Shown here: in pieces, positions 12,396-54,846 of the stretch
Position numbering within the stretch: the stretch's first letter is position 1
Layout of the letters: each line of letters begins with the position of its first letter
Sequence record: MZ475893.1
DNA length: 64,000 bases
Reading direction: 5' to 3' (one strand)
Translations under genes and position numbers: made by a program
Notes under the pieces: model-generated
Database searches by the model: none
What the model saw: the letters and a program-made list of their open reading frames with translations, nothing else
Told to the model about the DNA's origin: nothing

Positions 12396-12656
12396 ATGTA
12401 TCAATATGACCGCGATGAATTGAATGATCTGCCGCTTGACGTGCTGCATAGCGAAGCTGAAAAGCGTGGCTTGCTCGCTGACCTGGACGACGATGATGAT
12501 TGTCCTGACCGTGCAGTGCTGGTGGGCATGATCATTGATGATCAGAACGAGCGCAATGCCGAAGACGAAGAGGAAGAGCAGCGCCGTCAGATGCAAGATG
12601 ACGCTGACGATCACCGTCGCATGTTAGACGAACGCGACGGCTCAGACGACTGCTAA
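12396..12656 (+). CDS. small acidic protein with HeH/Rho-N-like motif
   Basis: GGAG RBS; LNDLPLDVLHSEAEKRGL...DRAVLVGMI. Confidence 0.75.
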   Translation: MYQYDRDELNDLPLDVLHSEAEKRGLLADLDDDDDCPDRAVLVGMIIDDQNERNAEDEEEEQRRQMQDDADDHRRMLDERDGSDDC

Positions 12657-12657
12657 C

Positions 12658-12996
12658 ATGCTATACTCTGGGCAGCAATACGATACACTCAGTCCTGACC
12701 AGTTGAATGAGTGTTTCAATCTGATTGAAAGTTGCATGGTGGCCTCTGGCTGCCGTGGCTTTCAGATAGTGTTATCACCATCTGGTCATGGCGATTGTCG
12801 TAGCGTCGTCCACATTCAGCACCCACAGTATGCAGGTCACATTGAGTTCCCCTCAGTTGACCGTGATACTTTTCGTGTAACACTCGTCGCAACACGCGGT
12901 TGCTATGACAGCCGCACAGTGTTCGTACCAAATTCAGATACAGCCTATTCAGTGATAGGTCTGTATCTCTCAAACTTTATAGGGGCTACAAAATGA
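12658..12996 (+). CDS. hypothetical protein
   Basis: Tightly packed ORF. Confidence 0.7.
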   Translation: MLYSGQQYDTLSPDQLNECFNLIESCMVASGCRGFQIVLSPSGHGDCRSVVHIQHPQYAGHIEFPSVDRDTFRVTLVATRGCYDSRTVFVPNSDTAYSVIGLYLSNFIGATK

Positions 12997-13337
12997 AACG
13001 CCGCGTTATTCGTATCGATCAGTCAGAGTTCAACGGTGAAGCGCTTGTCTTCCCACCATCATTCAACATCACCGGCATTGACGTTGTGGTGCTTGTGACC
13101 GTGAAGCACGAAGATTTCGGTGGCTTGAAGTTTCAAGATACCTATCGTGTGAACGAACTACGTGTAAGCGAACATACAAATCCCCTGCGTCAGGAGATTG
13201 AGATCGTAGAGTACAGCAAACTGCCGAACGATGAAGCAATCTTCACACGACTACTCGACGTTGATTATTTCGACGACGACATTGCAGAGCGTGACCTGCG
13301 TCTGTACGATGCACCGACCACAATCGTCACTGCGTAA
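12993..13337 (+). CDS. hypothetical protein
   Basis: ATG overlaps upstream stop (ATGA). Confidence 0.75.
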   Translation: MKRRVIRIDQSEFNGEALVFPPSFNITGIDVVVLVTVKHEDFGGLKFQDTYRVNELRVSEHTNPLRQEIEIVEYSKLPNDEAIFTRLLDVDYFDDDIAERDLRLYDAPTTIVTA

Positions 13338-13345
13338 TAATCTTT

Positions 13346-13377
13346 AGGGCTGCCATCTTGGTGGCCCTTTTTGTTTT
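13346..13377 (+). terminator. intrinsic terminator
   Basis: AGGGCTGCCA-TCT-TGGTGGCCCT-TTTTGTTTT. Confidence 0.8.
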
Positions 13378-13420
13378 CTGTAAACTACACGCACAATCCC
13401 AACAATGCGAGAACGCACAG

Positions 13421-13795
13421 ATGCCAAAGCGCCGCTTTTATTTGATGTTCTTTATCAGTCAGGCAGAACTCGACGCCAAGACTTTCTATCAACACAACAT
13501 GCGCATCCTGACAACGATACGCCGCACACGCTGCATCTTCCTTGTGGTAAGAGAGACTGGTGAAGTCTATGTGCCAGGCAGCGCCGTGTATCAGTCTGCA
13601 ATCGAAGAAGATCTAACGCAGATGGTCTTTGACGATCTGCACAAGGCCACCGAGTCTGTGAATGCGGTTGAGTCCTTTGCTCAAGCCATCGCAGTAAACA
13701 AAAACGATAAGACAGTTCGCTACTGCGGCCGCAATCCAGAGGTGAGTGTCGTCTTCTTTGATCGCATGTTCACGAAAGTGGAGGTTCATATATGA
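13421..13795 (+). CDS. hypothetical protein (start uncertain)
   Basis: ORF coupled to next gene. Confidence 0.65.
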   Translation: MPKRRFYLMFFISQAELDAKTFYQHNMRILTTIRRTRCIFLVVRETGEVYVPGSAVYQSAIEEDLTQMVFDDLHKATESVNAVESFAQAIAVNKNDKTVRYCGRNPEVSVVFFDRMFTKVEVHI

Positions 13796-14067
13796 GTTAC
13801 GATCCGCCTAAGCCAACTACGTCTCTTGGCGCTTCTCTTGCTTCGCGTTGTGCTCACTCCACCAGAGAGAAAGCGAATAAGACGCGCAAGAAATACCCCG
13901 CGACAAAGACTGTGGTTGCTACACTGACCGCACCTATGCACGCTGCTGTGCAACGTCTCGCTAACAGTCGTGGCCTGTCTATTCAGAAGTGTCTGGTGCG
14001 TATGCTTGAAGCCGAGTTGGCGAAAGAGGGTATCACTTACGCTAAAGAACAGGACGAAGACGAATGA
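13792..14067 (+). CDS. putative ribbon-helix-helix DNA-binding protein
   Basis: TVVATLTAPMHAAVQRLANSRGLSIQKCLVRML fits strand-helix-G-S-helix pattern. Confidence 0.6.
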   Translation: MSYDPPKPTTSLGASLASRCAHSTREKANKTRKKYPATKTVVATLTAPMHAAVQRLANSRGLSIQKCLVRMLEAELAKEGITYAKEQDEDE

Positions 14068-17916: not shown

Positions 17917-18961
17917 CGAATCTGCAATGATCGACGAAGACGTTCTCGAATGGCTCGAAGACCTGACCCGTCATAAGTTGCTGGACGTGATTGGCTTAAT
18001 CAACAATCTGATTTTCGTCCATCGTCCTGTTCTCGATCTGCCGACACTCGGTACGGACGAAGATGTAGCAGCACTGTCGCACGCTGACCTGACAACGTTG
18101 TTCCGTCTGGTTGCACCAGAATGCTCTGTTGATACAAACACGCTGAGCAATCTACAACTGCTTGGGCTTATGCTCAATCAGAAAGGCGTTGTTGTGTTCT
18201 CGCTGCCAAACAACAACAGCCCTATTCTAACTGCCCGTACGTTCAACGTACCTAATAAGCCGCAACGTTTGAACCCAGCTTCATCTAAGGGTGAGATTGC
18301 TACTGCTGTTAGCGCGTGGCTATTCGGACTGTTCCCGCTTGAGCTACGTTCTGATCAAAACGACATGCCGCGTGAGAACGGCCTGTACCTTGCCAAAGAC
18401 GAGCACGAACAAATTCGTTTCGGGCGTTTGTTCCGTAACGGCGCAGAAGGTGATGGCTGGACTTTCTGCGAAAGCTATTCTGATGCTACAGCCACTTACT
18501 GGCATCACAGCGATTCTCCTGTGGACGACGAACTGCCTATGAGTTTGCTGCATAGCTGGCTGCAAGTCTCTGCAACCACTTCACCAAACGAAGTGCATAA
18601 CGAAAACGTCAGTGTTCTGGTAACTGACTCGCAGCGCATCTTTGCTTTCCTGCGCAGTCTGAGCCAACACGTTAAAGCTGAGCTGGTGGCCAACTTTGAT
18701 GGCGTGCTTAACTCGACACATAGCAGTGTCGAATCTATCGGGCGTCTGACGCGTGCTGACTGGACAGCCGCTGCCGTAGCAGTAGCAGATGATAAAGACA
18801 TGAAGGACGGACTTGGCTCATGGGAAGAACACAGCGCGTGGGATTGTTTCGTGGCTACGTTGCAAAGTCTACGCTTCAATTTTGATACACGGGAATTCGA
18901 CCCGATGTATGACTATGGGAAACACGACAATGAGACCGATATTGATCGAGGAGACGAATAA
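17909..18961 (+). CDS. hypothetical protein
   Basis: AAGGAAGG RBS; 350 aa. Confidence 0.8.
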   Translation: MNNESAMIDEDVLEWLEDLTRHKLLDVIGLINNLIFVHRPVLDLPTLGTDEDVAALSHADLTTLFRLVAPECSVDTNTLSNLQLLGLMLNQKGVVVFSLPNNNSPILTARTFNVPNKPQRLNPASSKGEIATAVSAWLFGLFPLELRSDQNDMPRENGLYLAKDEHEQIRFGRLFRNGAEGDGWTFCESYSDATATYWHHSDSPVDDELPMSLLHSWLQVSATTSPNEVHNENVSVLVTDSQRIFAFLRSLSQHVKAELVANFDGVLNSTHSSVESIGRLTRADWTAAAVAVADDKDMKDGLGSWEEHSAWDCFVATLQSLRFNFDTREFDPMYDYGKHDNETDIDRGDE

Positions 18962-37502: not shown

Positions 37503-38891
37503 ATGATTTTCGATCTGCGCAAAAGTTTGGCCATGGTTCGTACCGTAATCGATGACCAAGTAATCTATAACTTCTACAACATGATTGGCCGCGATATGCA
37601 ACTGCCCGGTACTACTCTCAAAGAGATTATCGACGTGCAGCGTAAGGGCGAACTGTGCACCAACATCATGTGGGGTACTCAGAAGATGGAGTATCGTACA
37701 CTCAGATTCGATGAGCGTGGTGATCTTCTCTTAGACGTGACCGTTGGTCCGCATTGCTACGCACGGCTCTCTTACGATCAGATTGAACACTATGGGCGCA
37801 AAGAGTTTAAGGCTATTAACTGCATCGAGATCGATAGCTACCTCGCCCGTGACATTAGAGCGCATCTTCGCGCAGTGGGCCAAACTGAGCCTAAGCTCGA
37901 ATGGTATGACAACGTGTCGGATGATGAACTGAAGGACGCTCTACTTTCAGTTGGTCACATGGGACCTCTGGCTTATGAAGGTAAATCTCGTAACCAGTTA
38001 GAGGACATGTTTGAGAAATTCCAGCGTAAGCACGATGCAGAATACAAGTACACGCACGCGTATATTGGCCTAGACCCAGACGAAAAGCTGCCTGCTGATT
38101 TGTATGAAGATGAGGCACGCTCAATCACTCGTCGTTCTTTTGCTCCTCAGAAGACTGTCGATATGATGATCACTGAGATCTCAAACGTGATGCGCATGTT
38201 CGATATCTGGGACTCAGCGCCAACCTCTGAGACGCATGAGTGGTCAATGCAGGAAGCATACATGGCCTTCTATAACAGCTTAGTGATTGATAGCGATGGC
38301 AGCCGTCTGCGTGAACTGAAAGATAATCCACAGTTCGCTATCAACTTCATCTACGGCATGGCGGCTGACCTGAACTGGATTCACATCAACGAAATGACCG
38401 AAGACTATCGTGGCTCGGTTGTGAATCGCATCCTGCAGGAGATTGCTGTTGAGATCAGCACCTCTGATGATTACTGCACGACGGAGCACGGCATCGCTCT
38501 TATTAAGAAAGAAGAAGAGACAGAAGAAGAGGAGGATGCTTCTGAGCCAGTCTCCATCGAAAAGAAAAAGAAGAAAGGCTTCCCGGATATTCGTTCAGTA
38601 GAAGAGGTGAACTATGACGCACTGCATATCATCGAGATTACATACAAACTGCCCAAGCAGCCTAAGCTGCGCACTAAGCTAGACGTACTGCAATCTCGTG
38701 AGTGCTATCTTGAGCACTTCTTCGGTTGTTTGAAAGAAAATGATTGGCATAGATTAGGCAATATCACTAATCTTGATCTGCGCCGTATTGTTGGTGCTGT
38801 TACTAAATCTAATGGTGGTAGATTCAGCCACAACGCCCTGTTAAACATAATTAAACGTGCAGCTAAGAAACTGGCTGCCACTGAGTTCTAA
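37503..38891 (+). CDS. hypothetical protein (462 aa) with HeH-like segment
   Basis: AGGAG RBS; YDNVSDDELKDALLSVG...KSRNQLEDMF. Confidence 0.85.
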   Translation: MIFDLRKSLAMVRTVIDDQVIYNFYNMIGRDMQLPGTTLKEIIDVQRKGELCTNIMWGTQKMEYRTLRFDERGDLLLDVTVGPHCYARLSYDQIEHYGRKEFKAINCIEIDSYLARDIRAHLRAVGQTEPKLEWYDNVSDDELKDALLSVGHMGPLAYEGKSRNQLEDMFEKFQRKHDAEYKYTHAYIGLDPDEKLPADLYEDEARSITRRSFAPQKTVDMMITEISNVMRMFDIWDSAPTSETHEWSMQEAYMAFYNSLVIDSDGSRLRELKDNPQFAINFIYGMAADLNWIHINEMTEDYRGSVVNRILQEIAVEISTSDDYCTTEHGIALIKKEEETEEEEDASEPVSIEKKKKKGFPDIRSVEEVNYDALHIIEITYKLPKQPKLRTKLDVLQSRECYLEHFFGCLKENDWHRLGNITNLDLRRIVGAVTKSNGGRFSHNALLNIIKRAAKKLAATEF

Positions 38892-41109: not shown

Positions 41110-41931
41110 ATGCCAGAAGCACGCAAACCTCGCCCAGCTGATCGTTTCGCTAAAGCCCGTGCAGAGAAAAACTCACCGGAGCGTCAAGATGCGGCGGCCC
41201 AGCGCACGTATAAAGACACTCCGCCTAAATCTGTTCAGGTGAAACTGGATGCTGTGGCAGCTTCTAAGAAGAAAGTTTCTCGCGGTCCCAAGGCATCTCG
41301 TCCGCGTCAGTCGCCTGCTGTTGACGCATCGCCAAAGCCTCGCATTCGTGATGAGGAACGTGTGTACAATCTCGTACACATGATTCTCTCTGCGTGGAAA
41401 GCCGATGCAGAAAACGCGGCAGCAAGTGTGGGAATCGTTAAAGTGTCTCGGCGTAAGATTGAGGGTGCGTTACGCGATCTCAAGAATACGCGCTTTACTA
41501 AAATCCCAGGCTTAATCAATGACGTGCTTGTCTACAATGAACTGGTAGCTGAGTTCGGGCAGTGGGTGTACGTCGAGCACGACAGTCCTGATTGGATTTT
41601 TGTGCGCCTGCCTGAAAACAGCACGCCTGTGATTCGCGCTGACATTAGCTATGCCAAGACGGGTGAAACTTCCACGTCTGTTTCGACTTCTAGTGAAGTT
41701 CTGCTGAAAGATCTTAGCGAAGACGAAGAAGATGAGATCCCCGAGAATGTCGAGTACGACGATGCGGACGAGACTGACGAAGACGAAGAGGAGCCGTATG
41801 ACTACAGCGCTTGGTCTCTGCGTGACCTGCAGGATTATGCAAAGCGCTATGACTTCCTGCAGCCCGACACTGAGGGGTTCGATGATCGCGAGAAGTTGAT
41901 AGCAGCCATCGAGCTGGGGGAACAGCACTAA
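41110..41931 (+). CDS. basic N-terminus, acidic tract, C-terminal HeH-like motif
   Basis: AAGGA RBS; YSAWSLRDLQDYAKRYDFL...DREKLIAAI. Confidence 0.85.
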   Translation: MPEARKPRPADRFAKARAEKNSPERQDAAAQRTYKDTPPKSVQVKLDAVAASKKKVSRGPKASRPRQSPAVDASPKPRIRDEERVYNLVHMILSAWKADAENAAASVGIVKVSRRKIEGALRDLKNTRFTKIPGLINDVLVYNELVAEFGQWVYVEHDSPDWIFVRLPENSTPVIRADISYAKTGETSTSVSTSSEVLLKDLSEDEEDEIPENVEYDDADETDEDEEEPYDYSAWSLRDLQDYAKRYDFLQPDTEGFDDREKLIAAIELGEQH

Positions 41932-42218: not shown

Positions 42219-43829
42219 ATGGCACGTTTCGAAACTAACACTAATCTGGTTGGCAAAACTATCGTCCTGCTGAACGGCACCAAAGCGAAGATTGAAGACG
42301 CTATCGTTTCTGGCTACAAAGTGAAAGGCCAGACCAAGCGCATCGCAACCCGTGACGTCATCAAAGAGGGTGCGCACTTTAAAGAAATCGAGCGCACGCC
42401 GCTGAGCCAGCTGGAAGATACTGGCGAAGGTTATGTGAAGTTGAAAGAAGCCAAAGCCGCTTCTAAGAAAGCGCCTGCGAAAGACGCGAAAGCTACTGGC
42501 AAAAAAGCTGCGGCAAAAGACAAGCCTGCTAAGACCAGCAAAAAAGCTGCCGCTAAAGATAAGCCAGCGAAAGAGCAAGAGCCGAAAGTTCGTCGTAAGT
42601 CTGCGAAAGAGCAGGGCAACGATTATCAGGAACTCGCGCAGGCTATCATCAAAGGCGGTCGCCGTGCAGCGCCAGTTGAAATTGACAGCGTGGACGAAGC
42701 GCTGACCGATGCAATCGCTAAGCGTCTGACCGCTGTTGTCGAATCGTCTGAGATTGCGAAACTCGCCGCTGATAACAAAACGCCGATCGCTAACGCACTG
42801 ACCGTAACTTACGGTGCTGAGTTTGCGACTGATGCAAACGTTGTGCAGATTACGCTGAACCTGCAATACGCTAAGCCGACTGCCGTTGAGTCTGCCGCTC
42901 CTACTCTGGAGAATGCCGAAGCAATCGCAATGCGTGCTGCTAAAATGGCCGCACCTAAAGTGAGCGCTAAACTCAAGAAGGCGGTGCGTGAAGCGTTCGA
43001 CATTGAAACAGACCTTGAGCTGGGTACTGTGATTATGTCAGGCGATGATCAATTCGCTTACTACGGCGAAAGCGCGAAGCACGCTGGCAAAGCGCTGCTG
43101 TACGTTGTCGAAACTGACAAGTTCAAATCTGTCCTGGCCTCTACTCTGACCGACTACGAACTGCCTGCTGATGAAGAAGCTGAGGCAGAAGAAGCTGAGG
43201 CAGAAGAAGAAGAGGAAGAAGAAGAAGAGGAAGAAGAAGAAGAAGCCGCTGATGACTTCGACGACGAAGAGGAAGAAGATGCGGACGATGCAGATGATGC
43301 CGACGATGCTGATGGCGACGACGACGAATTCCAGTACGTTGCTGTAGGCGATGAACACTTTGCTCTGGTCAACAAAAAGATCACAGCCAAGTATCACGAT
43401 GCACTGGCTGAGCAATTCGGCGTTAGCACCGAAGCGCTGGTCCCAGGCTTAGTGTTGACCAACGGCGAGATCACTTTCGCTTATCTGGGCAACGATAGCA
43501 AAGGCGGCCTGCTCGTTATCGACCTCGACGACGATGCGGACGAAGACGACAACGTTCTGGTCTACCCGAAAGCAGACGTCAAATCACTGACCGACTTCTC
43601 TCCTGTGCTGGGTGATGCAGATGAAGAAGACGCAGACGATGCAGAAGAGACCGACGAAGAAGACGAAGATCAGGACGACGACTTCGAATTTGACGATGCG
43701 CCAACTGCTGACCTCGAAGACCTGTCTGACGATGAACTGCGTGACCGCGCTGTTGAGATGGGCCTGACCACTGTACGCAAAGCTGACAAAATGAACGCCA
43801 AGCAACTGCGTGCGCTGCTGTCTGAATAA
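42219..43829 (+). CDS. Lys/Ala linker plus highly acidic protein with C-terminal HeH-like motif
   Basis: SD hairpin AATACT-GAGG-AGTATT; poly-Glu/Asp tracts; biased codon usage. Confidence 0.9.
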   Translation: MARFETNTNLVGKTIVLLNGTKAKIEDAIVSGYKVKGQTKRIATRDVIKEGAHFKEIERTPLSQLEDTGEGYVKLKEAKAASKKAPAKDAKATGKKAAAKDKPAKTSKKAAAKDKPAKEQEPKVRRKSAKEQGNDYQELAQAIIKGGRRAAPVEIDSVDEALTDAIAKRLTAVVESSEIAKLAADNKTPIANALTVTYGAEFATDANVVQITLNLQYAKPTAVESAAPTLENAEAIAMRAAKMAAPKVSAKLKKAVREAFDIETDLELGTVIMSGDDQFAYYGESAKHAGKALLYVVETDKFKSVLASTLTDYELPADEEAEAEEAEAEEEEEEEEEEEEEEAADDFDDEEEEDADDADDADDADGDDDEFQYVAVGDEHFALVNKKITAKYHDALAEQFGVSTEALVPGLVLTNGEITFAYLGNDSKGGLLVIDLDDDADEDDNVLVYPKADVKSLTDFSPVLGDADEEDADDAEETDEEDEDQDDDFEFDDAPTADLEDLSDDELRDRAVEMGLTTVRKADKMNAKQLRALLSE

Positions 43830-47287: not shown

Positions 47288-47308
47288 CCCTTATCTGAGG
47301 AGATAAAC

Positions 47309-50300
47309 ATGTCCGAGAACAATCAAAGCGGAGCTACTCGCTTCGGCACAGAAGTGCAGGCCGGCATCGCAGAAGCGCAACGCCGTGCTAACTCTGCTGA
47401 GAGTGGCAAGCTGAACAAATGCACGATCATCGTGCTGACTTCGATTGACGCCAACCAGCGTTACTCTTATCTGTCCGCAGACGAACAACTGCGCGAAGAA
47501 CTGGTGCGCGGTAAAGTAATCAACCGTCTGCCTGACCTGTTAGAGCGTGCTGGTGGTAATACCGCTGCTGACAATAACAGCGCGTTCCACATCCTGCACC
47601 CAAACAACGGCGTGCCTACCTCGATCGATGCTCGCATCAAAGTGGGCGAAGGCAATGCGGTCATTCTGTCGTATACTGTAAACAAAGCAGTGACAGAGAT
47701 GCACGGTAGCTTATCGCTTGCTCTGTTTGCATCTGGCGCCGAAGACTTAAATGATCTCGCCGCTGATTTCGGTATTCACGCAATTGCGATTGTTGAAGAA
47801 TCGAAAGCCGCTGAGTTCATCAAAGGACTTGAAGCTCAGGTGGAAGCGTTGAATATTGTAAATCTCACTAGCATTGATGATTCTAACGATTCGTTAGACC
47901 TGCCAGTGATTGACTTCGCTGCATTAGCGGGCAATCCTACAACAGTGCTTACGGGTGCTGTGCGTACCTTCATCATGCAATCAATCAGCGGCGAAGTCTT
48001 CGCTGCAATCCCTAATAACGGAGAACTGAACGTGAAAAACGATAACGTGGCTCAGCCTGCTGACCTGGAAGAAGACTTCGACAACAATGATGAGATTGTT
48101 GATCAGAACGGCGGCGAAGGCGAAGTTACTGGCGAAGAGCTGCTGGGCTACAAAGCAGAAAATCTTTCGCTCGACCAAATGCGTAGTGCGCTTGAAGCGA
48201 TCAACTACGACCTGTCTGAAATGACGGAAGAAGCCATCCGTGAAGCGTTCGAAACTGAACAGAACCTTTACCTGGGTGGCGGCGATGATGAATCTTCCGA
48301 AGAAGAGGAAGATGAAGACGCCGCTGATGTTGACAGCGACGAAGAAGAAGAGGAAGAAGACGAGGAGTTCGATGCTCCTGCGTATCTGGCTCAAGCGCTC
48401 GCTGCTGAAAACTTCAGCCGTAGCGATCTGAAACTGCTGGTCAAGTCGCAAGACCTGAAAGTTATGAAGAACGACACTCCTGAAACTCTGGTGCAGAAGC
48501 TGCTGGACCTGGTGCAGGACGCATCGTCTGATGAAGTGTTCGAACTGATCACTGTGTTCGTTGAACTGCTGGACGAGCACGGCGTTGAGTGTGACGCGCT
48601 GCGTGCTACCATCGCTGAGGATGAAAGCGATGAAGACGAAGAAGAGGACGGCGAAGACGAAGACGAAGACGCCGATGAAGATGGCGACGACGAAGAAGAG
48701 GAAGATGAAGAGGAGTCTGATGAAGACGAATCTGAAACCGAATCTGACGACGAACCCGCAACGCTGTTTTCTGCCTCTGACGTTACTGATCCTCTCGACT
48801 ACTTCCAGTTCGAAGGTGGTGACCTGACTCACGAACAACGCGCCGCTGCCGTACAGGCGATGGGTTCAAGCACTGTTGGTCTGAACATCGTTCAGGTCAT
48901 GAAAGCGTTCAATCAAATCCGTTCACAGTCTAACGCGATTGACATTGCCGCTGATGAAGCCGACTCTGCGCTGTACGACATGCTGACTGCGCTGCCGTAT
49001 GCAACGCTGCTGAGCTTCGCTCAAGAGATTGAGCTGGACGTTGATGGCGAAGAGTCTGCCGAAGATCTCGTCACTCTGCTGATGGACGAATCTACTGCCG
49101 ACAGCGATACGCTGAAAGCGCTGGCGTATGTGTTCGAAACCTACGGCGGCCTGGGTGTTGAAGCAGATGATATCCTGCTGATGGACTGGCATGAAGCGCT
49201 GGCGCTGGTTATTCCTGTGTATGCATCGTCAGACGAAGTTGAGTCTGATGCAGAAGAAGACGAAGACGAAGACGTTATCGCCGATGAAGATTCGTCTAAC
49301 GCTAACCTGAAGTTCCTGAAATCTGTTGACGTCAACAATCCTGTCGGCCCGATGCTTGAAGTTGATATGGACCGCACTCTGGTTATCAACTACACCTTCA
49401 CTGACGGTAACACTTACCGCGATGTGCAAGATGAGCTGGCTGATATCGGTGGCGTTAACTACCGCTTCCCGTTCAATCTGGGCAAAGCTGGTAAAGCAAA
49501 CAAGAGCAGTGCGCCTGGTAGCCTGATTGCTCCTGCTGAACATCTGATCGCAATGTTAGACCGCGCCGGTACTACCCGCTTCTTAGCTGACCCGAACACC
49601 TTCGATGTTGGTGTGTGGGCAGAATCTCTGGAGCGTATGCTGAACGCAGAAATCTCTAACAACCTGTACGCTGGTCGCATTGAAGATGGCGCTGACCCGC
49701 AGCAAGCTGGCATCGTAGTCGGTGACTTCATCGATGAAGACGAGCAAGCAGAAGTTGCTGACCTCGGCCTGCTGGATGAAGATGAGCTGGAAGCGTACAC
49801 TGGTGATCATCTGCCGATTGCAAGCCTGTACAATGCGCAAGCCCGCGTACGTCCAGTCAACGTCGATAGCTCTTACGTTGCACTGAGCACCGTAGTGCTG
49901 AACGTTGCAGTCCCTGGCTTCTGGTGTGACTCTGATGTTGGCCGTCTGGTGCAAGCGTGTGTTAATCGCGTAATCAGCCTGGCGGAAAGCGTTGAAGGCA
50001 TCAAAGTGTATGCAGGCTTCACTCTGGAATCTGCTGCGCTGCTGAACAACGGTCGCCTGTACGAAGTTGTTGGTGCGCTGCGTGAGATGGACGGTGTGCA
50101 GTCTTACTCTGCCGCAGACGCTGCTAACTTCTCAGAAGCGGAAGACATTATCGAAGTAGCGTCTTCTATCGATGATCGTGACCTGCCGTTCACTGTACTG
50201 GCAAGCGGCCTGTCTGGCGCAACGTTTGAAAACGGCGGTGACCTGACCGTGCTGGTTCCGTGCTCTGTCTTCGACGAAGAAGAAGATGAGTCCGAAGAGG

Positions 50301-50326
50301 ACGAGTCAGAAGAAGACGAAGAGTAA
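47309..50326 (+). CDS. 1005-aa extremely acidic protein with about three HeH-like repeats
   Basis: SD hairpin TTATCT-GAGG-AGATAA; several Asp/Glu tracts; strong codon bias. Confidence 0.9.
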   Translation: MSENNQSGATRFGTEVQAGIAEAQRRANSAESGKLNKCTIIVLTSIDANQRYSYLSADEQLREELVRGKVINRLPDLLERAGGNTAADNNSAFHILHPNNGVPTSIDARIKVGEGNAVILSYTVNKAVTEMHGSLSLALFASGAEDLNDLAADFGIHAIAIVEESKAAEFIKGLEAQVEALNIVNLTSIDDSNDSLDLPVIDFAALAGNPTTVLTGAVRTFIMQSISGEVFAAIPNNGELNVKNDNVAQPADLEEDFDNNDEIVDQNGGEGEVTGEELLGYKAENLSLDQMRSALEAINYDLSEMTEEAIREAFETEQNLYLGGGDDESSEEEEDEDAADVDSDEEEEEEDEEFDAPAYLAQALAAENFSRSDLKLLVKSQDLKVMKNDTPETLVQKLLDLVQDASSDEVFELITVFVELLDEHGVECDALRATIAEDESDEDEEEDGEDEDEDADEDGDDEEEEDEEESDEDESETESDDEPATLFSASDVTDPLDYFQFEGGDLTHEQRAAAVQAMGSSTVGLNIVQVMKAFNQIRSQSNAIDIAADEADSALYDMLTALPYATLLSFAQEIELDVDGEESAEDLVTLLMDESTADSDTLKALAYVFETYGGLGVEADDILLMDWHEALALVIPVYASSDEVESDAEEDEDEDVIADEDSSNANLKFLKSVDVNNPVGPMLEVDMDRTLVINYTFTDGNTYRDVQDELADIGGVNYRFPFNLGKAGKANKSSAPGSLIAPAEHLIAMLDRAGTTRFLADPNTFDVGVWAESLERMLNAEISNNLYAGRIEDGADPQQAGIVVGDFIDEDEQAEVADLGLLDEDELEAYTGDHLPIASLYNAQARVRPVNVDSSYVALSTVVLNVAVPGFWCDSDVGRLVQACVNRVISLAESVEGIKVYAGFTLESAALLNNGRLYEVVGALREMDGVQSYSAADAANFSEAEDIIEVASSIDDRDLPFTVLASGLSGATFENGGDLTVLVPCSVFDEEEDESEEDESEEDEE

Positions 50327-50332
50327 TTGACA

Positions 50333-50352
50333 TGCGGTCCTTCGGGGCCGCA
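50333..50352 (+). terminator. UUCG hairpin, identical core to 2720-2737
   Basis: TGCGGTCC-TTCG-GGGCCGCA. Confidence 0.5.
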
Positions 50353-50377
50353 ATCTTTCTCAACAGGAACTGTCTAA

Positions 50378-51199
50378 ATGTCAGAACAAGTTGACCACGC
50401 AACTAACATCATTAAGATGGTTAGTGACCGTGATGCTAAGATTAGCGAGCTGTCTGTTACGGCAAACGAGCTGCAAGGTCAGGTGAATGACTATGCTGCC
50501 GAACTCGCCGCATCTGCTGTGCGTGAAACTGCATTGCGTTTGAAGCTACGTTCTCAAGAGCGCCAGACGAATACCGATTTAGTTCGTCTGGAAACTCGCA
50601 CGAAAGAGTTGGTGGATATTTCAAACACTCAGATGGCCGAAAGTAACGAGCTTAAAGCACGCGTTGAAGAAATGAACGCTAAGCTGGCGCAAGTTGACCC
50701 GATGCCGTTCGTGCTGCATCTGGTTGCTGTGCAAGCCGCATCTGTGTTCTCGTACATGGTGCAGTCGTTTGCTCATGCTCATGTTAACCAGCGCACAAAC
50801 GATACCACACGCACACTCAGTGCTCTGATGGTAGGCGAGACAGCGCGGCGTTATCAGTCTTTCGAAAAGACCATCGCTCGCTACTGCAACTCGATTGGCG
50901 CTGAACGTCCGAAAGCAAATGATGTGCGTAACGCTTTCCCTGACTTCATGCGTAATGAAGCTGATTTATTCTGTAAAGACCCGAAGTACAGTCACGATTG
51001 CATGGCGTTAGCTGCTATGCTTAATCTGCCTCGTACATCGTGGATGTATCGAAAGTCTCTGGACGCCGTAAACCACTTCGCGTGGATTGCAGCTTTCGAA
51101 GGCAGTCCTCAAGAGTTTGAGTCAGATTCAGATTACAACGAATTATACGTTAACTCGCTTATCGATATTGCAAGCGCGTTAATCGGGCAAAACTTTTAA
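50378..51199 (+). CDS. coiled-coil hypothetical protein
   Basis: Heptad-rich N-terminal half. Confidence 0.8.
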   Translation: MSEQVDHATNIIKMVSDRDAKISELSVTANELQGQVNDYAAELAASAVRETALRLKLRSQERQTNTDLVRLETRTKELVDISNTQMAESNELKARVEEMNAKLAQVDPMPFVLHLVAVQAASVFSYMVQSFAHAHVNQRTNDTTRTLSALMVGETARRYQSFEKTIARYCNSIGAERPKANDVRNAFPDFMRNEADLFCKDPKYSHDCMALAAMLNLPRTSWMYRKSLDAVNHFAWIAAFEGSPQEFESDSDYNELYVNSLIDIASALIGQNF

Positions 51200-51224
51200 T
51201 CTGTAAAACTTCCCTGTGATTTAT

Positions 51225-51244
51225 TCTGTAAACACTAATTGAAG
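51225..51244 (+). promoter_or_regulatory. TCTGTAAACA(C/T)TAATTGAAG element, copy 1
   Basis: 19/20 identical to 51939-51958; both precede codon-biased genes. Confidence 0.5.
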
Positions 51245-51294
51245 TTCGCAACGGGCAAAAGCCCAAATCGAAAAATTAACGGAGTTCCACTACA

Positions 51295-51864
51295 ATGGCA
51301 AAAGCTACTAAGTCAACTAACCTGGTTCCTACCCTGGTTTCTCGCATCGCTAAAAAGTCTGGCTCTATCGGTACTTCGAAAGCAAAAGCAACTGACCTGC
51401 CGCATGACATTCTGATCGAATCTCAGCACGTTGTCGAAATCATCGGTTATATCACTGACCGTTCTGCGAACCACGTTACTCTGCGTCACAAAAAAGGCCA
51501 CGGTTCTTCTTCTCAGATCGTTTCAACCTTCGGCCCGGGTCAACTGCTGACCGTTCTGGGTGAAGCCGGTTCACACGGTTCTGTGCGTGCGCTGATTACT
51601 GCTCCGGTCTGCGAACTGAAAGGCTTCACCATTAAGTATGACGGCGATACCATCATCGCTACTTCTATCGAAACTGGCGAAGTGATTCACGTTAACACCC
51701 AGCTGGCCGGTCACACCGTTCGCGCTACTGTGAACGAAACTGCCGCCGCTAAGAAATACGGCACGCCTGCTCCAGGCAAAGGCAAGAAAGATGCTAAGCC
51801 TGCTAAAGCAGACAAAGCAGCGAAAGGCGGTAAGAAAAAGAAAGGTAGCGACGAAGACTTTTAA
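51295..51864 (+). CDS. abundant basic protein with Lys/Ala tail ending SDEDF
   Basis: GGAG RBS; strong codon bias. Confidence 0.9.
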   Translation: MAKATKSTNLVPTLVSRIAKKSGSIGTSKAKATDLPHDILIESQHVVEIIGYITDRSANHVTLRHKKGHGSSSQIVSTFGPGQLLTVLGEAGSHGSVRALITAPVCELKGFTIKYDGDTIIATSIETGEVIHVNTQLAGHTVRATVNETAAAKKYGTPAPGKGKKDAKPAKADKAAKGGKKKKGSDEDF

Positions 51865-51897
51865 TCGCTGATCTGAAAATCTGTAAAAACTGATTAT

Positions 51898-51927
51898 GCA
51901 GAGCAACAAAAAATAAAGTTGCTCTGC
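51898..51927 (+). repeat. perfect 10-bp inverted repeat with A-rich loop
   Basis: GCAGAGCAAC-AAAAAATAAA-GTTGCTCTGC. Confidence 0.8.
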
Positions 51928-51938
51928 CGTTAAACGAA

Positions 51939-51958
51939 TCTGTAAACATTAATTGAAG
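51939..51958 (+). promoter_or_regulatory. TCTGTAAACA(C/T)TAATTGAAG element, copy 2
   Basis: See copy 1. Confidence 0.5.
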
Positions 51959-51994
51959 CAAGTCGCTTCTCATCCCATACAGGAAATAAAAACC

Positions 51995-52786
51995 ATGGCT
52001 AAATCTGCTAAAGTAACCGTAACCGTCGCACAGAAAGTTCTGGCTCAGATGCTGGGTGTTGTTGTAGCGAACGCAAGCGAGAAAGAACTCGTTGCGATTC
52101 TGTCTGACCTGGGCCTGACTGTTGCTGCGAAAGGTAAAGGTGCTAAAGCTGAGAAAGCTGCGAAAGGCGGCAAGAAAGCTAAAGCCGCTACCGTTGCTCA
52201 GATCGTTAAGGCCGTTGAAGAAGAGGAAGCTATCTCCCTCGACGGCGTAAGTGAAGATGACCTGCGTGCTGCGGTCATCAAAGCTAAGCTGGCTAAGGCC
52301 AACAAAGCTAAAGCGCTGGACGAAGAGGAGTTGACTGAACTCCTGACCGACGCAATGGGTGCCGAGTCTGATGAAGACGAGGAAGAGGAAGAGGACGAAG
52401 AAGAAGAAGAGGACGAAGACGACTCGGACGACGAAGACGAAGATGAAGACGACGAGGACTCAGATGATGAAGATGAGGACGAAGACGACGAAGATTCGGA
52501 CGACGAAGACGAGGACGAAGATGATGAGGACGAAGACGAAGACGAGGATGAAGATGAGGACGAAGATGAAGATCTCGACCTCGACGGCCTCGACGAAGAC
52601 GAACTCCGCGCCCTCGTGATCGACAACAAGCTGGCCACTAAGGCCAAAGCTAAAAAGATGGACGAAGACGAACTTCGTGAACTGTGTGAATCCCACTTCG
52701 GCGGCGACGATGAAGACGAAGACGAAGATGAGGACGAAGACGATGAAGACTTCGACGACGAAGACGAAGACGAAGACGACGAATAA
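51995..52786 (+). CDS. Lys/Ala N-terminus, two HeH-like repeats and very long Asp/Glu tracts
   Basis: AGGA RBS; LDGVSEDDLR.. and LDGLDEDELR.. repeats. Confidence 0.9.
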   Translation: MAKSAKVTVTVAQKVLAQMLGVVVANASEKELVAILSDLGLTVAAKGKGAKAEKAAKGGKKAKAATVAQIVKAVEEEEAISLDGVSEDDLRAAVIKAKLAKANKAKALDEEELTELLTDAMGAESDEDEEEEEDEEEEEDEDDSDDEDEDEDDEDSDDEDEDEDDEDSDDEDEDEDDEDEDEDEDEDEDEDEDLDLDGLDEDELRALVIDNKLATKAKAKKMDEDELRELCESHFGGDDEDEDEDEDEDDEDFDDEDEDEDDE

Positions 52787-52801
52787 GTCCTGATCTGCCG
52801 C

Positions 52802-52836
52802 TGCCCTGCAAGACTAATGAGTGTCTGCGCAGGGCA
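52802..52836 (+). terminator. hairpin after stop
   Basis: TGCCCTGC/GCAGGGCA outer and AGAC/GTCT inner stems. Confidence 0.45.
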
Positions 52837-52999
52837 AGAAATATTCGAAAAATAGTTCGAATTATTTCGCAAAAAGTTTGAAAAATTCCTGTCGTTGTTT
52901 ATTGCACATAGTAATATTCGACTACAGGAATTAAACCTGAAAAATTTTACTTTTATCCAACGCGACGAGTCGCACACAATAAATTCACGGAGTATTACG

Positions 53000-53512
53000 A
53001 TGACTAAGAAAATCATTTCTGGCCTGAACAAAAACCTGAAAGCTATCGCTAAATCAGAAGCTGCCCTGGCCAAAACTGTTGTTGCTACCAACAAAGAGAT
53101 CGAAAACCTGGGTTCACAGCGTGCTGGTATCGAAGCGCAGATCGCTGAACTGTCTGGTGTTGCTGCTCCTGCCAAAGCTGATAAAAAAGCTAAAGGCGCC
53201 AAAGCTGAAAAAGCGGCCAAGCCTGCTAAAGCTGAAAAAGCAGCTAAAGCAGGTAAGAAAGAAAAAGCTGCTAAAGCTGAAAAGCCTGCCAAAGCTGATA
53301 AAAAAGCGAAAGGCGCCAAAGCTGAAAAAGCTGCTAAGCCTGCTAAAGCAGACAAAGCTGGCAAGAAAGAAAAAGCTGCTACCAAGCCTGCTAAAGCTGA
53401 TAAAAAAGCGAAAGGCGCCAAGGCCGACAAAGCTGCTAAAGGCGGTAAAGCTGACAAAGCCGGTAAGAAAAAGAAAGCGCAGTCTGATGACTTCGAATTC
53501 GAAATGGAATAA
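53000..53512 (+). CDS. histone H1/AlgP-like Lys-Ala-Pro repeat protein with N-terminal coiled coil
   Basis: GGAG RBS; three imperfect copies of PAKADKKAKGAKA(E/D)KAAK; ends SDDFEFEME. Confidence 0.88.
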   Translation: MTKKIISGLNKNLKAIAKSEAALAKTVVATNKEIENLGSQRAGIEAQIAELSGVAAPAKADKKAKGAKAEKAAKPAKAEKAAKAGKKEKAAKAEKPAKADKKAKGAKAEKAAKPAKADKAGKKEKAATKPAKADKKAKGAKADKAAKGGKADKAGKKKKAQSDDFEFEME

Positions 53513-53544
53513 GCAAGCGGTCGCATAGCGCGATAACTTGATCG

Positions 53545-53577
53545 AGAGGGCAGCGCTGACGGGCGTTTGCCCTCTTG
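53545..53577 (+). terminator. hairpin/terminator
   Basis: AGAGGGCAGCGCT-GACG-GGCGTTTGCCCTCT. Confidence 0.55.
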
Positions 53578-53609
53578 TCGTATCTATCTCATTTTCGAGG
53601 CTCTTTAAA

Positions 53610-54095
53610 ATGTCCAAACAAGAAGTATTCAACAGGCTTGATGATCTTCACTCCAAAGAACGTGAACGTATCAAACAAGCCAAGCAAGGTCCCTCCTATT
53701 TCGAACTGACGAACCTGCGTATTGAAGCAGCCGCTCGTCTCGCTCGTGCTCTCCAAACTCTCAAAGCCGCAAACGTTGTTGGTAACGTTGAAGGTGTCTC
53801 TCTGCAGGAAGATGCGCTTGAAGTCGCTCAAGCCTACTGGACTGCTATCTTAGATGGCTTAACCCCTGTAGTAGTTGATGGCTCGCCTATGCGCAAGCTG
53901 CTTGATGGTATGCCTGCATGTATCGAAGCGTTCCGTGTTGTCGTAATGGAAAGCGCTATGCGGGAACATCTGGTCGTTCAATGCAATGCGATTGCAGATG
54001 ACATTAAGGGTTTCCCTCAACTGACTGGGCATGTTCTGCCTACTGTTCAACACACCTGCGAAGAGGGGTGCAACTGTGGCTCAATCACTGAGTGA
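53610..54095 (+). CDS. hypothetical protein
   Basis: GAGG RBS. Confidence 0.75.
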   Translation: MSKQEVFNRLDDLHSKERERIKQAKQGPSYFELTNLRIEAAARLARALQTLKAANVVGNVEGVSLQEDALEVAQAYWTAILDGLTPVVVDGSPMRKLLDGMPACIEAFRVVVMESAMREHLVVQCNAIADDIKGFPQLTGHVLPTVQHTCEEGCNCGSITE

Positions 54096-54846
54096 GAAGA
54101 TTAACCGTTACTTCAATCTGATGGAGGACATCCGCGCTGAGATGTTCCGTGTAATTGACGTATCTGACCGTTACTTCGGTATCGTTAGTTTCAACACTAA
54201 CATGCAGGCACTGCAAACCACACTGGTGAGCAGGTCCACCCTGATGGAAGTTAAGCTGCTTGAGGGTATCAAAGGAGCGGAGCTGATTGCGTTTGGCAAT
54301 ATGGTTCACACCGTAGAGCAATGGGTTGCTGGTGGCATGAAGGGCGCTTTCCCTATCGAGCAGACCAAAGACGTGTATGCCAAATATCGCGCTGCTACCT
54401 CAGATGAACCACAGGCACAAAGTGAACCTGAGCCTGCTAATGCACCGCAGACTGATGCAGATGTGTTAGACCCCCAAGAGCTGGACAATATCAAGGTTCA
54501 ACTTCTATCCTTCGATGACTCTGAACTGATCGACCATGCCGCTCAGTTTAAACTCGGCACTCGTACACGCCTGCGTTGCATGGGCCGTGACGACCTGCTG
54601 GACATGCTGTTTGACCATCATGGTATCTATGCAGAAAACGACCAGCGCCGCAATGAAAGTGTTGCAGACTGGTTAGAGCGTATACCTCTTGATGATGCTC
54701 TCCGCGAAGTCGACCGCATAGATGATAGCAGTGTACTTGATCACGTTGCGGACGCTATGAGCGTTATGTCGGGTGTCAATGACGCTGTGACGCGAGCGCG
54801 TATAAAGCAGTCGCTGAAAGAGCTACACACTAAGCCTGCTCAGTAA
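54076..54846 (+). CDS. hypothetical protein with HeH-like motif
   Basis: GAGGGG RBS before GTG; LLSFDDSELIDHAAQFKLGTRTRLRCMGRDDLLDML. Confidence 0.75.
   Translation: MAQSLSEKINRYFNLMEDIRAEMFRVIDVSDRYFGIVSFNTNMQALQTTLVSRSTLMEVKLLEGIKGAELIAFGNMVHTVEQWVAGGMKGAFPIEQTKDVYAKYRAATSDEPQAQSEPEPANAPQTDADVLDPQELDNIKVQLLSFDDSELIDHAAQFKLGTRTRLRCMGRDDLLDMLFDHHGIYAENDQRRNESVADWLERIPLDDALREVDRIDDSSVLDHVADAMSVMSGVNDAVTRARIKQSLKELHTKPAQ

What the first reader, a model, noticed from the sequence alone, without database searches (positions are those of the whole stretch)
12396..54846. A helix-extension-helix (Rho-N/SAP/LEM-like) module reused in at least seven proteins
Seen: pattern L..(L/M)S..EL...A...(G/K)L.......M....L..L in 42219 (LEDLSDDELRDRAVEMGLTTVRKADKMNAKQLRALL), 51995 twice (LDGLDEDELRALVIDNKLATKAKAKKMDEDELRELC), 54076 (LLSFDDSELIDHAAQFKLGTRTRLRCMGRDDLLDML), 41110, 12396, 37503, about three times in 47309, and possibly in 17909. 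It usually sits beside acidic tracts. Inference: a shared docking tag that recruits unrelated proteins to one nucleic acid or hub protein.
Basis: partly seen in the sequence, partly recalled or inferred. Interest (0 to 1): 0.7.

Follow-up and report, generated by a model that had tools for sequence, protein, structure and literature searches.

The report
SAP-like module on acidic phage proteins
A roughly 40-residue SAP/LEM/Rho-N-like helix-loop-helix domain is reused in several otherwise unrelated, very acidic proteins of an Erwinia jumbo phage, and in other phages the same domain sits on the tails of single-strand-DNA-binding proteins, which points to a shared tether to replicating phage DNA, not yet tested.

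Summary
The window is the last 64 kb of Erwinia jumbo phage pEa_SNUABM_45 (an Alexandravirus-like phage that has no phage nucleus). The motif is real but graded.

- **Statistically homologous copies:** the C-terminus of 42219, and two full copies plus one partial copy in 51995.
- **Probable, by profile-profile comparison only:** 54031 and 37503.
- **HeH-like on independent evidence:** the 41110 C-terminus, whose orthologues carry the canonical module at the same place.
- **Fold or pattern only, no detectable homology:** three parts of 47309 look SAP-like in a model; 12396 has only a conserved SAP-like pattern.
- **Not supported:** 17909 and segment b of 47309.

An AlphaFold model of the module (pLDDT 85) best matches solved SAP, LEM and Rho-N domains.

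Among 1.84 billion protein representatives only 46 clusters carry the module. They usually hold 2-5 tandem copies inside acidic tails. Several are phage SSBs or lie beside UvsX/RecA-like or Sak4-like (AAA_24) recombinase genes. One phage fuses the modules to an SSB. Another encodes SSB, a two-module protein and a RecA-like protein as three adjacent genes.

Best reading: a mobile HeH tether that brings acidic proteins to the phage replication and recombination nucleoprotein, most likely through its Lys-rich loop. The ligand is untested. This is a new variant of a known fold.

The parts
43707..43826 (+). Canonical module at the C-terminus of the 42219 protein (aa 497-536). An acidic tract and a DFEF motif precede it. 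The CDS is 42219-43829.
   Evidence: The segment is present and highly conserved in orthologues. Leave-one-family-out HMM gives E 4e-8. Pfam hits are SAP 0.0018 and LEM 0.05, both sub-threshold.
52232..52372 (+). Module 'a' of the 51995 protein (CDS 51995-52786). It follows a Lys/Ala-rich basic tract and precedes a 68-residue acidic tract.
   Evidence: HMM cross-hits and leave-one-family-out E 9e-9. hhalign to the 42219 module gives 96.9%.
52574..52714 (+). Module 'b' of the 51995 protein, with the tail motif LCESHFGG. This is the sequence that was modelled.
   Evidence: Leave-one-family-out E 4e-16. AF2 pLDDT 85, with a helical turn, helix 8-17, a loop holding a short helix 23-28, and helix 31-42. 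Structural matches are SAP, LEM and Rho-N domains.
52070..52153 (+). Partial copy near the N-terminus of the 51995 protein (KELVAILSDLGLTV...), mainly the first helix plus the GL residues.
   Evidence: The five-family HMM gives E 0.016 in the whole-genome scan. It is conserved in orthologues.
54496..54636 (+). Probable module in the 54031/54076 protein (aa 156-202), with the tail LFDHHG.
   Evidence: hhalign gives 81.6% to the 42219 module and 77.8% to the 51995b module, in register. It is the top non-self hit of the ABC profile. Leave-one-family-out HMM gives only 0.74. Orthologues share the LCEHYG tail, and the module is lost in some of them.
37899..38039 (+). Possible LEM-like variant in the 37503 protein (aa 133-179; W..(L/M)S..E(L/M)R..L...G.GP(L/M)R...).
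   Evidence: It is conserved in orthologues. hhalign to the 42219 module gives 85.4%, in register, but comparisons with the 51995 modules fail. Leave-one-family-out gives no hit. Orthologues in other phages carry an additional canonical module near the C-terminus, at 1e-7 to 2e-5.
41803..41907 (+). Divergent HeH-like C-terminal segment of the 41110 protein (aa 232-266), just after an acidic tract.
   Evidence: Pfam Ish1 E 4e-4, below the cut-off. Protein-language-model neighbours are SAP, Rho_N and HeH clusters, a lead only. Orthologues carry a canonical module at the same C-terminal position, at 7.8e-6, 3.7e-4 and 0.0049.
48155..48277 (+). 47309 protein segment a (aa 283-323). It is SAP-like in the model but has no detectable homology to the module.
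   Evidence: AF2 gives pLDDT 60-77, with a turn, helix 288-297, a 9-residue loop and helix 307-323. VIA-align gives Z 5.0 to the Hcc-1 SAP domain over 52 of 55 residues. Profile score is at background.
48992..49231 (+). 47309 protein segments c and d (aa 562-641). This helical domain resembles the larger SAP domains of FAN1 and Siz1.
   Evidence: AF2 gives pLDDT 71-82. VIA-align gives FAN1 453-533 at Z 6.2 and the Siz1 SAP domain at Z 4.8. There is no profile similarity.
48413..48511 (+). 47309 protein segment b (aa 369-401). It has a helix-loop-helix shape but lies inside a five- to six-helix bundle, so it is ambiguous.
   Evidence: AF2 gives pLDDT 72-87. The best matches are death-fold bundles at Z 5-6, with one PIAS-type SAP domain at Z 4.9.
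12408..12551 (+). 12396 protein. It has a conserved SAP-like pattern (EEL..MPLDVL..LA..KGLL - acidic loop - DRE.LVGMI) but is not a detectable member of the module family.
   Evidence: The ortholog alignment shows the pattern. hhalign score is 9.8, which is background. Atlas neighbours include many SAP and Rho_N clusters, a weak lead.
18056..18175 (+). 17909 protein candidate (aa 50-89). It is not supported.
   Evidence: hhalign score is 12.2, which is background, and the family HMMs give no hit. The segment is conserved but lies inside a larger globular protein.
1..151 (+). 3' end of the phage SSB gene (record 198789-200042). Its tail alternates poly-D/E blocks with poly-K/S blocks. It is the homologue of the SSB core that carries 4-5 modules in metagenomic protein P0029.
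   Evidence: PHROG phrog_15004 'single strand DNA binding protein', E 1e-151. Sequence shown. phmmer to the P0029 N-terminus gives 2.5e-15.
163..2712 (+). UvsX-like recombinase gene directly after the SSB gene. This is context for the SSB / module protein / recombinase gene order seen in other phages.
   Evidence: PHROG phrog_97 'UvsX-like recombinase', E 3.6e-73.

Best explanation
**What it is.** The module is a divergent domain of about 40 residues of the helix-extension-helix (SAP/LEM/Rho-N) fold. It has a helical turn, an acidic helix 1 ending in G/K-L, a Lys-rich connector (T-K-K-K-A-K-K-M/L) that forms a short helix, and an acidic helix 2 (DEDELRELL). An LC..H(F/Y)G tail often follows.

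**How it behaves.** It acts as a mobile cassette. It is inserted singly or in tandem into long polyacidic, disordered stretches of otherwise unrelated phage proteins.

**Shown.** The homology of the core copies, the fold, the mobility between orthologues, and the association with SSB and recombinase genes in other phages.

**Inferred.**
- The module tethers these acidic proteins to the phage replication and recombination nucleoprotein, that is DNA coated with SSB and UvsX.
- The direct contact is most likely between the Lys-rich connector and the DNA backbone, as in SAP and LEM-like domains.
- The flanking acidic tracts either modulate that contact or engage basic DNA-binding proteins.
- In this phage the tagged set (42219, 51995, 54031, probably 37503 and 41110) forms a cluster next to the type II topoisomerase genes.
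For: **Core homology.**, with decoy controls.

**Fold.**
- AF2 pLDDT 85.
- Of the top 50 of 48,161 PDB chains, 11 are SAP, LEM or Rho-N entries by title: 1zrj Z 5.2, 1a62 residues 1-47 Z 5.2, 2do1, 7ndy, 6h9u, 1h1j, 2odc, 2kw9, 1h9e, 2do5 and 1h9f. About 6 more are known SAP-type domains: SLX4, PIAS1, FAN1, CDNF and the T4 endonuclease VII C-terminus.
- BFVD hits are named Rho_N. Swiss-Prot AFDB top hits are the SAP-like protein BP-73, Ku, Rho and hnRNP U.
- Pfam tallies over 34 copies: LEM 8, SAP 7, Ish1 1, Rho_N 1.

**Conserved basic connector.** Over 67 non-redundant copies, K is the commonest residue at positions 22-24, 26 and 27, with A67% at position 25. The connector's net charge is positive in 57 of 67 copies (range -4 to +5).

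**Neighbouring sequence features.** The 42219 and 51995 proteins carry H1-like Lys/Ala/Pro tracts.

**Context in other phages.**
- P0026 is DUF669 and PHROG SSB plus 3 modules.
- P0029 is a phrog_15004 SSB plus 4-5 modules, followed by a RecA_N gene.
- P0005 carries 4 modules and sits directly after an AAA_24 gene, in a block with polA, primase and a PDDEXK nuclease.
- In L042 the gene order is an SSB homologue (E 5e-33), then the two-module protein P0009, then RecA_N.

**Context in this phage.** SSB and the UvsX-like gene are adjacent at the start of the window. GyrB-like and ParC-like genes follow the module cluster.
Against: - No binding was tested. The one complex job with DNA was not folded.
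- The module as a whole is acidic, with net charge about -3 to -10 in most copies, and it sits in polyacidic tracts. That is unusual for a DNA binder.
- Several HeH domains bind proteins rather than DNA: LEM binds BAF, the SLX4 SAP domain binds MUS81, and MANF binds BiP (entries).
- On SSBs, acidic tails classically mediate protein contacts (T4 gp32, E. coli SSB; general knowledge).
- All Pfam hits are below gathering thresholds, and the structural Z-scores are modest (5.2 or less).
- In this phage the module genes are about 40-54 kb away from the SSB and UvsX genes.
Confidence: 0.45

Rival explanations
1. The module is a protein-protein docking domain. It binds one phage or host hub protein, for example the UvsX-like recombinase, the SSB core, a helicase or polymerase, or the topoisomerase. 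This would work like the partner-binding acidic tails of T4 gp32 or E. coli SSB, with DNA not contacted directly.
For: - Modules lie within SSB C-terminal tails and next to RecA-like or AAA_24 genes.
- The module's overall charge is acidic.
- Structural neighbours include the protein-binding HeH domains SLX4-SAP, LEM-BAF and MANF-BiP.
- Conserved aromatic tails (HFG, YY, DFEF, DFDD) resemble SSB-tip motifs.
Against: - No partner was identified.
- The best-conserved surface-type residues are the lysines of the connector.
- Most SAP, LEM-like and Rho-N domains bind nucleic acid (general knowledge).
- The co-occurring Lys/Ala/Pro tracts suggest DNA association.
Confidence: 0.3
2. The modules have no common ligand. 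They are small stable helical units that punctuate very long acidic, disordered tracts. They could act as folding or solubility spacers, or as 'stickers' in blocky polyampholyte tails. On this view they spread only by local duplication and recombination.
For: - Copies occur in tandem, separated by acidic linkers.
- The phage's own SSB tail has Lys/Ser blocks where the homologous P0029 tail has modules.
- The module is gained and lost between orthologues without loss of the gene.
Against: - Sequence conservation of the module is strong at 40-60% protein divergence, including surface residues.
- It recurs on three different SSB families.
- The gene neighbourhood is specific.
Confidence: 0.12
3. 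The unit is a helix-two-turn-helix or helix-hairpin-helix type DNA-binding motif, as in Nei/Fpg or ribosomal protein uS13, and not a SAP/LEM-type HeH.
For: - The best, though non-significant, PDB sequence-profile hits are the H2TH segments of endonuclease VIII 178-197 (E 1.5) and uS13 32-56 (E 0.5).
- The model has a short middle helix at residues 23-28.
Against: - Those E-values are not significant.
- Structural searches rank SAP, LEM and Rho-N domains first and do not list Fpg, Nei or uS13.
- Pfam sub-threshold hits are to LEM, SAP, Ish1 and Rho_N.
Confidence: 0.05
4. The resemblance is a chance pattern of amphipathic helices in D/E/L/K-rich proteins.
For: - This is true for part of the list. 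17909, 47309 and 12396 score at background in profile tests.
- 54031 and 37503 fail the leave-one-family-out HMMER test.
- A loose regular expression also picks up two unrelated segments.
Against: - Core copies have E-values of 1e-7 to 1e-16 with clean decoys.
- Only 46 clusters among 1.84 billion representatives match.
- The fold prediction is confident.
Confidence: 0.05

Closest known systems
SAP domain (Pfam PF02037; e.g. Tho1, SAF-A/hnRNP U, PIAS1, Ku70, Hcc-1)
   Same: - It has about 35-45 residues, with two amphipathic helices joined by an extended connector.
- The spacing from 'ELR' to the G/K-L that ends helix 1 is the same, and basic residues lie in the connector.
- Best structural matches are 1zrj Z 5.2, 2do1, 1h1j and 2kw9.
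- It is the second most frequent Pfam hit, in 7 of 34 copies, with the best E-value at 3.8e-4.
   Different: - All hits are below the Pfam gathering score.
- The connector is about 3-5 residues longer and forms a short helix.
- The helices are strongly acidic, so the domain is net negative.
- It occurs in tandem inside polyacidic tracts of phage proteins.
- DNA binding has not been shown.
LEM / LEM-like domain (PF03020; emerin, LAP2)
   Same: - Both have an N-terminal helical turn and two helices joined by a long connector.
- It is the most frequent sub-threshold Pfam hit, in 8 of 34 copies.
- The 37503 variant has a G-x-GP-h connector reminiscent of LEM.
   Different: - Bacteria and phages have no BAF partner.
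- The hits are sub-threshold.
- The LEM signature residues are not conserved in the canonical copies.
Rho_N (PF07498), the N-terminal helix bundle of transcription terminator Rho and the many phage 'Rho_N domain' proteins
   Same: - The model aligns with Rho residues 1-47 at Z 5.2.
- Named BFVD neighbours are phage Rho_N proteins.
- Mycobacterial Rho appears among the AFDB hits.
   Different: - No cold-shock-like OB domain follows the module.
- There is only one sub-threshold Pfam Rho_N hit among the 34 copies.
Acidic C-terminal tails of single-strand-DNA-binding proteins (T4 gp32 A-domain, T7 gp2.5, E. coli SSB-Ct)
   Same: - Modules lie in the acidic C-terminal tails of phage SSBs from three PHROG/Pfam SSB families.
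- They lie next to recombinase genes.
- Conserved aromatic residues occur in the acidic ends.
   Different: Classical SSB tails are short and unstructured. Here the tails hold folded HeH units in tandem. In the window's phage the modules are on other proteins, not on the SSB itself.
Chromatin proteins that combine a small DNA-binding domain with acidic and basic low-complexity tracts (DEK with SAP plus acidic regions; HMGB1 with an acidic tail; histone H1-like K/A/P tracts)
   Same: 42219 and 51995 combine a K/A/P-rich basic tract, long poly-D/E tracts and HeH modules. This comparison rests on general knowledge.
   Different: There is no sequence homology, the organisms are phages, and the function is untested.

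Membership tests
HeH fold superfamily (Pfam clan of SAP, LEM, HeH, Rho_N, Ish1) | Two helices of about 10-12 residues, joined by an extended connector of about 8-12 residues and packed through conserved hydrophobic residues. | tested here: met
   The AF2 model has pLDDT 85, with helix 8-17, connector 18-30 (containing a short helix 23-28) and helix 31-42. The invariant residues are the hydrophobic L10, L19, L33 and L36 of the broad alignment.
HeH fold superfamily | Structural superposition on solved SAP, LEM or Rho-N domains over the whole domain. | tested here: met
   VIA-align over 48,161 chains puts 11 SAP, LEM or Rho-N entries by title, and about 17 by knowledge, in the top 50. They cover 39-45 of 47 residues at Z 3.4-5.2. 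Foldseek E-values are not significant because of the small size.
SAP (PF02037), LEM (PF03020), Rho_N (PF07498), Ish1 (PF10281) as Pfam families | Score at or above the family's curated gathering threshold. | tested here: not met
   The best scores are SAP 18.3 bits against 23.9, LEM 13.6 against 24, and Ish1 21.1 against 26.6. Tallies over the 34 copies are all sub-threshold.
Rho_N | The helix bundle is followed by the cold-shock-like OB RNA-binding domain of Rho. | tested here: not met
   The modules are C-terminal or are followed by acidic tracts. No OB domain follows them.
LEM | Binds barrier-to-autointegration factor (BAF). | not testable with these tools
   No BAF is known in bacteria or phages (general knowledge), and no binding test was possible.
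SAP | Binds double-stranded (A/T-rich) DNA. | not testable with these tools
   The complex-prediction job with DNA was not folded and gives no evidence.
The phage module family itself (profile A4) | Significant match to a profile built without the candidate's own family. | tested here: met
   Met for 42219 (4e-8), 51995b (4e-16) and 51995a (9e-9). Not met for 54031 (0.74) or 37503 (no hit). Not met for 41110, 47309, 12396 or 17909.
H2TH (Fpg/Nei, uS13) | Significant sequence or structural match to H2TH domains. | tested here: not met
   PDB profile hits have E-values of 0.5-1.5. H2TH domains are absent from the structural top 50.

The most novel reading that the evidence does not exclude
The HeH modules, together with the block-wise alternating acidic and basic tails, form a localisation code for a membrane-less replication and recombination compartment in a jumbo phage that lacks a chimallin nucleus. 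On this reading an SSB-tail-derived module has been copied onto client proteins (42219, 51995, 54031, 37503, 41110), so that they co-assemble with SSB- and UvsX-coated phage DNA.
Probability: 0.12. Interest if true: 0.8.

Novelty: new variant of a known kind. Interest (0 to 1): 0.5.

Why it matters
Almost every gene of this phage group is annotated 'hypothetical'. A recognisable tag shared by several acidic proteins, and linked through gene fusion and neighbourhood to SSB and recombinase genes, gives a first handle on a block of about five unknown genes.

The prediction is simple to test: an isolated 40-residue module should be enough to target a reporter to phage DNA or to one partner.

It also adds a distinct subfamily to the SAP/LEM/Rho-N fold. 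This subfamily is acidic, has a Lys-rich loop and occurs in tandem. It shows that some phage SSB tails contain folded domains. Interest is moderate, because the fold is known, HeH domains are already common in phage proteins, and no function has been shown.

Tried and rejected
- **Four-sequence seed HMM:** it found only its own members. Ortholog enrichment was needed.
a strict form matched nothing because I mis-specified it. A loose form gave 5 hits against 0.3 expected, two of them unrelated. I used HMM and decoy statistics instead.
- **PDB sequence-profile searches:** there were no significant hits, and the best were H2TH segments.
- **Foldseek against the PDB:** nothing significant for a 47-residue model. 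VIA-align, BFVD and AFDB searches were informative.
- **First wide search:** I rebuilt it from related-loci loci.
- **Complex prediction of the module with 24 bp of window DNA:** it was not folded by the tool, so it gives no evidence either way.
- **Pfam and PHROG scans of the neighbouring genes 43905-54092:** nothing named.
- **Virion proteomics or expression data for this phage group:** none found in the literature.
- **Half-module family seen in relatives (Y.DWSDDDLR.ALLE.GLVF):** there is no clear counterpart in the window's 40344-40853 gene.
- **Nucleus-import signal idea:** I considered and rejected it. This phage group serves as a comparison phage outside the chimallin-encoding set (bioRxiv 10.1101/2023.02.24.529968).
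- **Capsid-targeting or internal-protein tag:** no evidence for or against, so I kept it only as a remote possibility.

Full report
**Identity and setting**

The window is 100% identical to the last 64 kb (record 199892-263891) of Erwinia phage pEa_SNUABM_45, a 263,891-bp jumbo phage. Its relatives are the Alexandravirus and Sasquatchvirus phages Alexandra, AD1 and Y3. These belong to the PaBG/Lu11 group (PMC7412058). Alexandra was included only for comparison, outside the chimallin-encoding set, in the nucleus-forming-phage study (bioRxiv 10.1101/2023.02.24.529968).

Nearly all genes are annotated 'hypothetical'. PHROG scans and annotations from relatives name a few:
- an SSB whose gene ends at window nt ~151;
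- a UvsX-like recombinase at 163-2712;
- GyrB-like, ParC-like and a third topoisomerase gene at 54942-57014, 57749-59410 and 61504-62367.

**Is the motif there, and is it more than chance?**

All quoted segments exist. I collected orthologues from six to thirteen related phages and built one module profile per gene family.

*Core copies.*
- The 42219-family profile finds 51995b at E 7e-7 and 51995a at E 0.0097 among 2,932 six-frame ORFs of the whole genome. The best reversed-sequence decoy is 0.12.
- hhalign gives 97-98% probability among 42219, 51995a and 51995b.
- Leave-one-family-out HMMs recover 42219 at 4e-8, 51995b at 4e-16 and 51995a at 9e-9.
- PHROGs links 51995 to the 42219 family profile over its C-terminal 80 positions, at 6.6e-7.
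- A third, partial copy lies near the N-terminus of 51995 (E 0.016).

*54031 and 37503.* They align in register with the 42219 module at 82% and 85% hhalign probability. They are the two best non-self hits of the core profile against 34 full-length family alignments (25.8 and 21.8, against 16.5 or less). Leave-one-family-out HMMER does not recover them. I call them probable and possible.

*The rest.* The whole-genome scan finds no further copy outside the window. The module HMMs do not find 41110, 47309, 12396 or 17909.

**Mobility**

In relatives the canonical module also occurs at these sites:
- at the C-terminus of 41110 orthologues (7.8e-6, 3.7e-4, 0.0049);
- as a first-half motif in a small ORF family.

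It is absent from several 54031 orthologues and apparently duplicated in phage Y3. Across 13 loci there are 60 hits at E<0.01 and none in reversed decoys. The window's own 41110 C-terminus is divergent. It hits Pfam Ish1 at 4e-4, and its language-model neighbours are SAP, Rho_N and HeH clusters (a lead only).

**Fold**

A 34-sequence non-redundant module alignment (A4) gave an AlphaFold2 model with mean pLDDT 85. It shows a helical turn, helix 8-17, a connector with a short helix 23-28, and helix 31-42.

- Foldseek against the PDB is not significant for so small a model. The only whole-domain match is the Tho1 SAP domain, with TM 0.63/0.66.
- An exhaustive VIA-align pass over 48,161 chains puts these domains in the top 50, each covering about 40-45 of the 47 residues: SAP (1zrj Z 5.2, 2do1, 6h9u, 1h1j, 2kw9, 2do5), Rho residues 1-47 (1a62 Z 5.2), LEM and LEM-like (7ndy, 2odc, 1h9e, 1h9f), and the SAP-type domains of SLX4, PIAS1, FAN1, CDNF and T4 endonuclease VII.
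- Named BFVD neighbours are phage Rho_N proteins.
- Swiss-Prot AFDB neighbours are the SAP-like protein BP-73, bacterial Ku, Rho and hnRNP U.
- Over the 34 copies, the most frequent Pfam hits are LEM (8), SAP (7), Ish1 and Rho_N, all below their thresholds.

Membership of any single Pfam family is not.

**The weaker candidates**

- aa 277-330 matches the Hcc-1 SAP domain (Z 5.0).
- aa 543-641 matches the FAN1 and Siz1 SAP domains (Z 6.2 and 4.8).
- aa 352-445 is a five- to six-helix bundle that matches death-fold domains as well as a PIAS-type SAP domain.

These Z-scores are in the range the tool calls 'middling'. So 47309 holds SAP-like units by shape but no detectable homology to the module.

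12396 has a conserved SAP-like pattern and weak language-model leads. 17909 has nothing beyond the pattern.

**Distribution and context**

A profile search of 1.84 billion cluster representatives found only 46 clusters at E<=1e-3. About 18 are homologues of the window's families, and 28 are other proteins. Most carry 2-5 tandem modules in acidic proteins.

The informative ones are:
- P0026 and P0044: a DUF669 (PHROG SSB) N-terminal domain followed by 2-3 modules. The family hits were obtained for P0026. The P0044 domain was assigned by eye.
- P0029: the same SSB family as this phage's own SSB (phrog_15004; phmmer 2.5e-15) with 4-5 modules in its tail, followed by a RecA-like gene.
- P0003: a weak SSB hit with 3 modules.
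- P0005: 4 modules, placed directly after an AAA_24 (Sak4-like) gene in a block with polA, primase and a PDDEXK nuclease.
- P0009: a small two-module protein of 51995-like architecture. It lies between an SSB homologue (E 5e-33) and a RecA-like gene on a 137-kb phage contig.

Fused in one phage and adjacent in another, SSB and module proteins show the classic fusion/fission signal of functional linkage. In the window's phage, SSB and the UvsX-like gene are adjacent. The SSB tail carries Lys/Ser blocks where P0029 has modules.

**Mechanism**

Over 67 non-redundant copies the consensus is D-(L/Y/I)-D-D-(M/L)-D-E-D-E-L-R-E-L-V-V-E-x-G-L-A-T-K-K-K-A-K-K-(L/M)-D-E-D-E-L-R-E-L-L-E-E. The domain is net negative in most copies, about -3 to -10. 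Its connector is net positive in 57 of 67 copies (range -4 to +5).

My best reading rests on four things: the usual nucleic-acid binding of this fold, the H1-like K/A/P tracts in 42219 and 51995, the SSB fusions, and the recombinase neighbourhoods. It is a mobile tether to the replication and recombination nucleoprotein, most likely through contacts between the connector and the DNA backbone. The acidic tracts would modulate binding or engage basic DNA-binding proteins.

The main rival is docking to one protein hub. The acidic surface, the position in SSB tails and the protein-binding HeH precedents favour that rival. Neither reading was tested. The one complex prediction with DNA was not folded.

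**Verdict**

- The fold assignment is supported.
- The 'docking tag' inference is plausible and sharpened by context, but it is unproven.
- This is a new, rare variant of a known fold, not a new kind of system.

Noticed in passing
window 40858-40878, 41942-41962, 42115-42135 (+): A 21-nt motif, GGACAAAATNNTGGTWGYATC, occurs only three times in the whole 264-kb genome. All three lie upstream of the module genes 41110 and 42219, against 0.03 expected by chance. Each is followed about 25-30 nt later by a -10-like element, so it may be a local promoter or operator.
   Followed up: partly
window 1-151 (gene starts upstream at record 198789) and 163-2712: The phage SSB (phrog_15004) has a tail of alternating poly-D/E and poly-K/S blocks. 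An unusually long UvsX-like recombinase follows it: 849 aa aligned to a 506-position profile, which suggests a large insertion.
   Followed up: partly
L027 2890-4533 (P0029); L042 7024-7941, 8001-8507 and 8766-10337: A fusion/fission pair. In one metagenomic phage an SSB is fused to 4-5 modules and followed by a RecA-like gene. In another, SSB, a two-module protein and a RecA-like protein are three adjacent genes.
   Followed up: yes
Its HMM E-value is only 0.12-0.33, so it is unproven.
   Followed up: partly
window 52198-53526 (-): A 442-aa antisense ORF overlaps the 51995 gene. It is most likely an artefact of the long GAN (D/E codon) repeats, not a gene.
   Followed up: no
window 54942-57014, 57749-59410, 61504-62367: The type II topoisomerase is encoded in three separate genes (GyrB-like, ParC-like and a second topoisomerase fragment). 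Small genes lie between them, immediately downstream of the module cluster.
   Followed up: partly
window 8375-10213, 20471-21610, 25753-26733: PHROG hits to an EPS depolymerase or tail-fibre-like protein, a radical-SAM protein and an endonuclease, all inside the same plus-strand block.
   Followed up: no
window ~42012-42045: A terminator-like hairpin (gactgtgag...ctcacagtc followed by a T run) lies between the two copies of the repeated motif upstream of 42219.
   Followed up: no
P0037, P0040, P0033, P0031 (metagenomic proteins): Related units occur in non-acidic settings. These include CGPxxGxxRWTKxELV... repeats separated by Ser/Pro-rich linkers, half-motif repeats (QQMSDDELRQHLVDRGLIP), and an RsgI-like anti-sigma factor from a cellular genome.
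   Followed up: no
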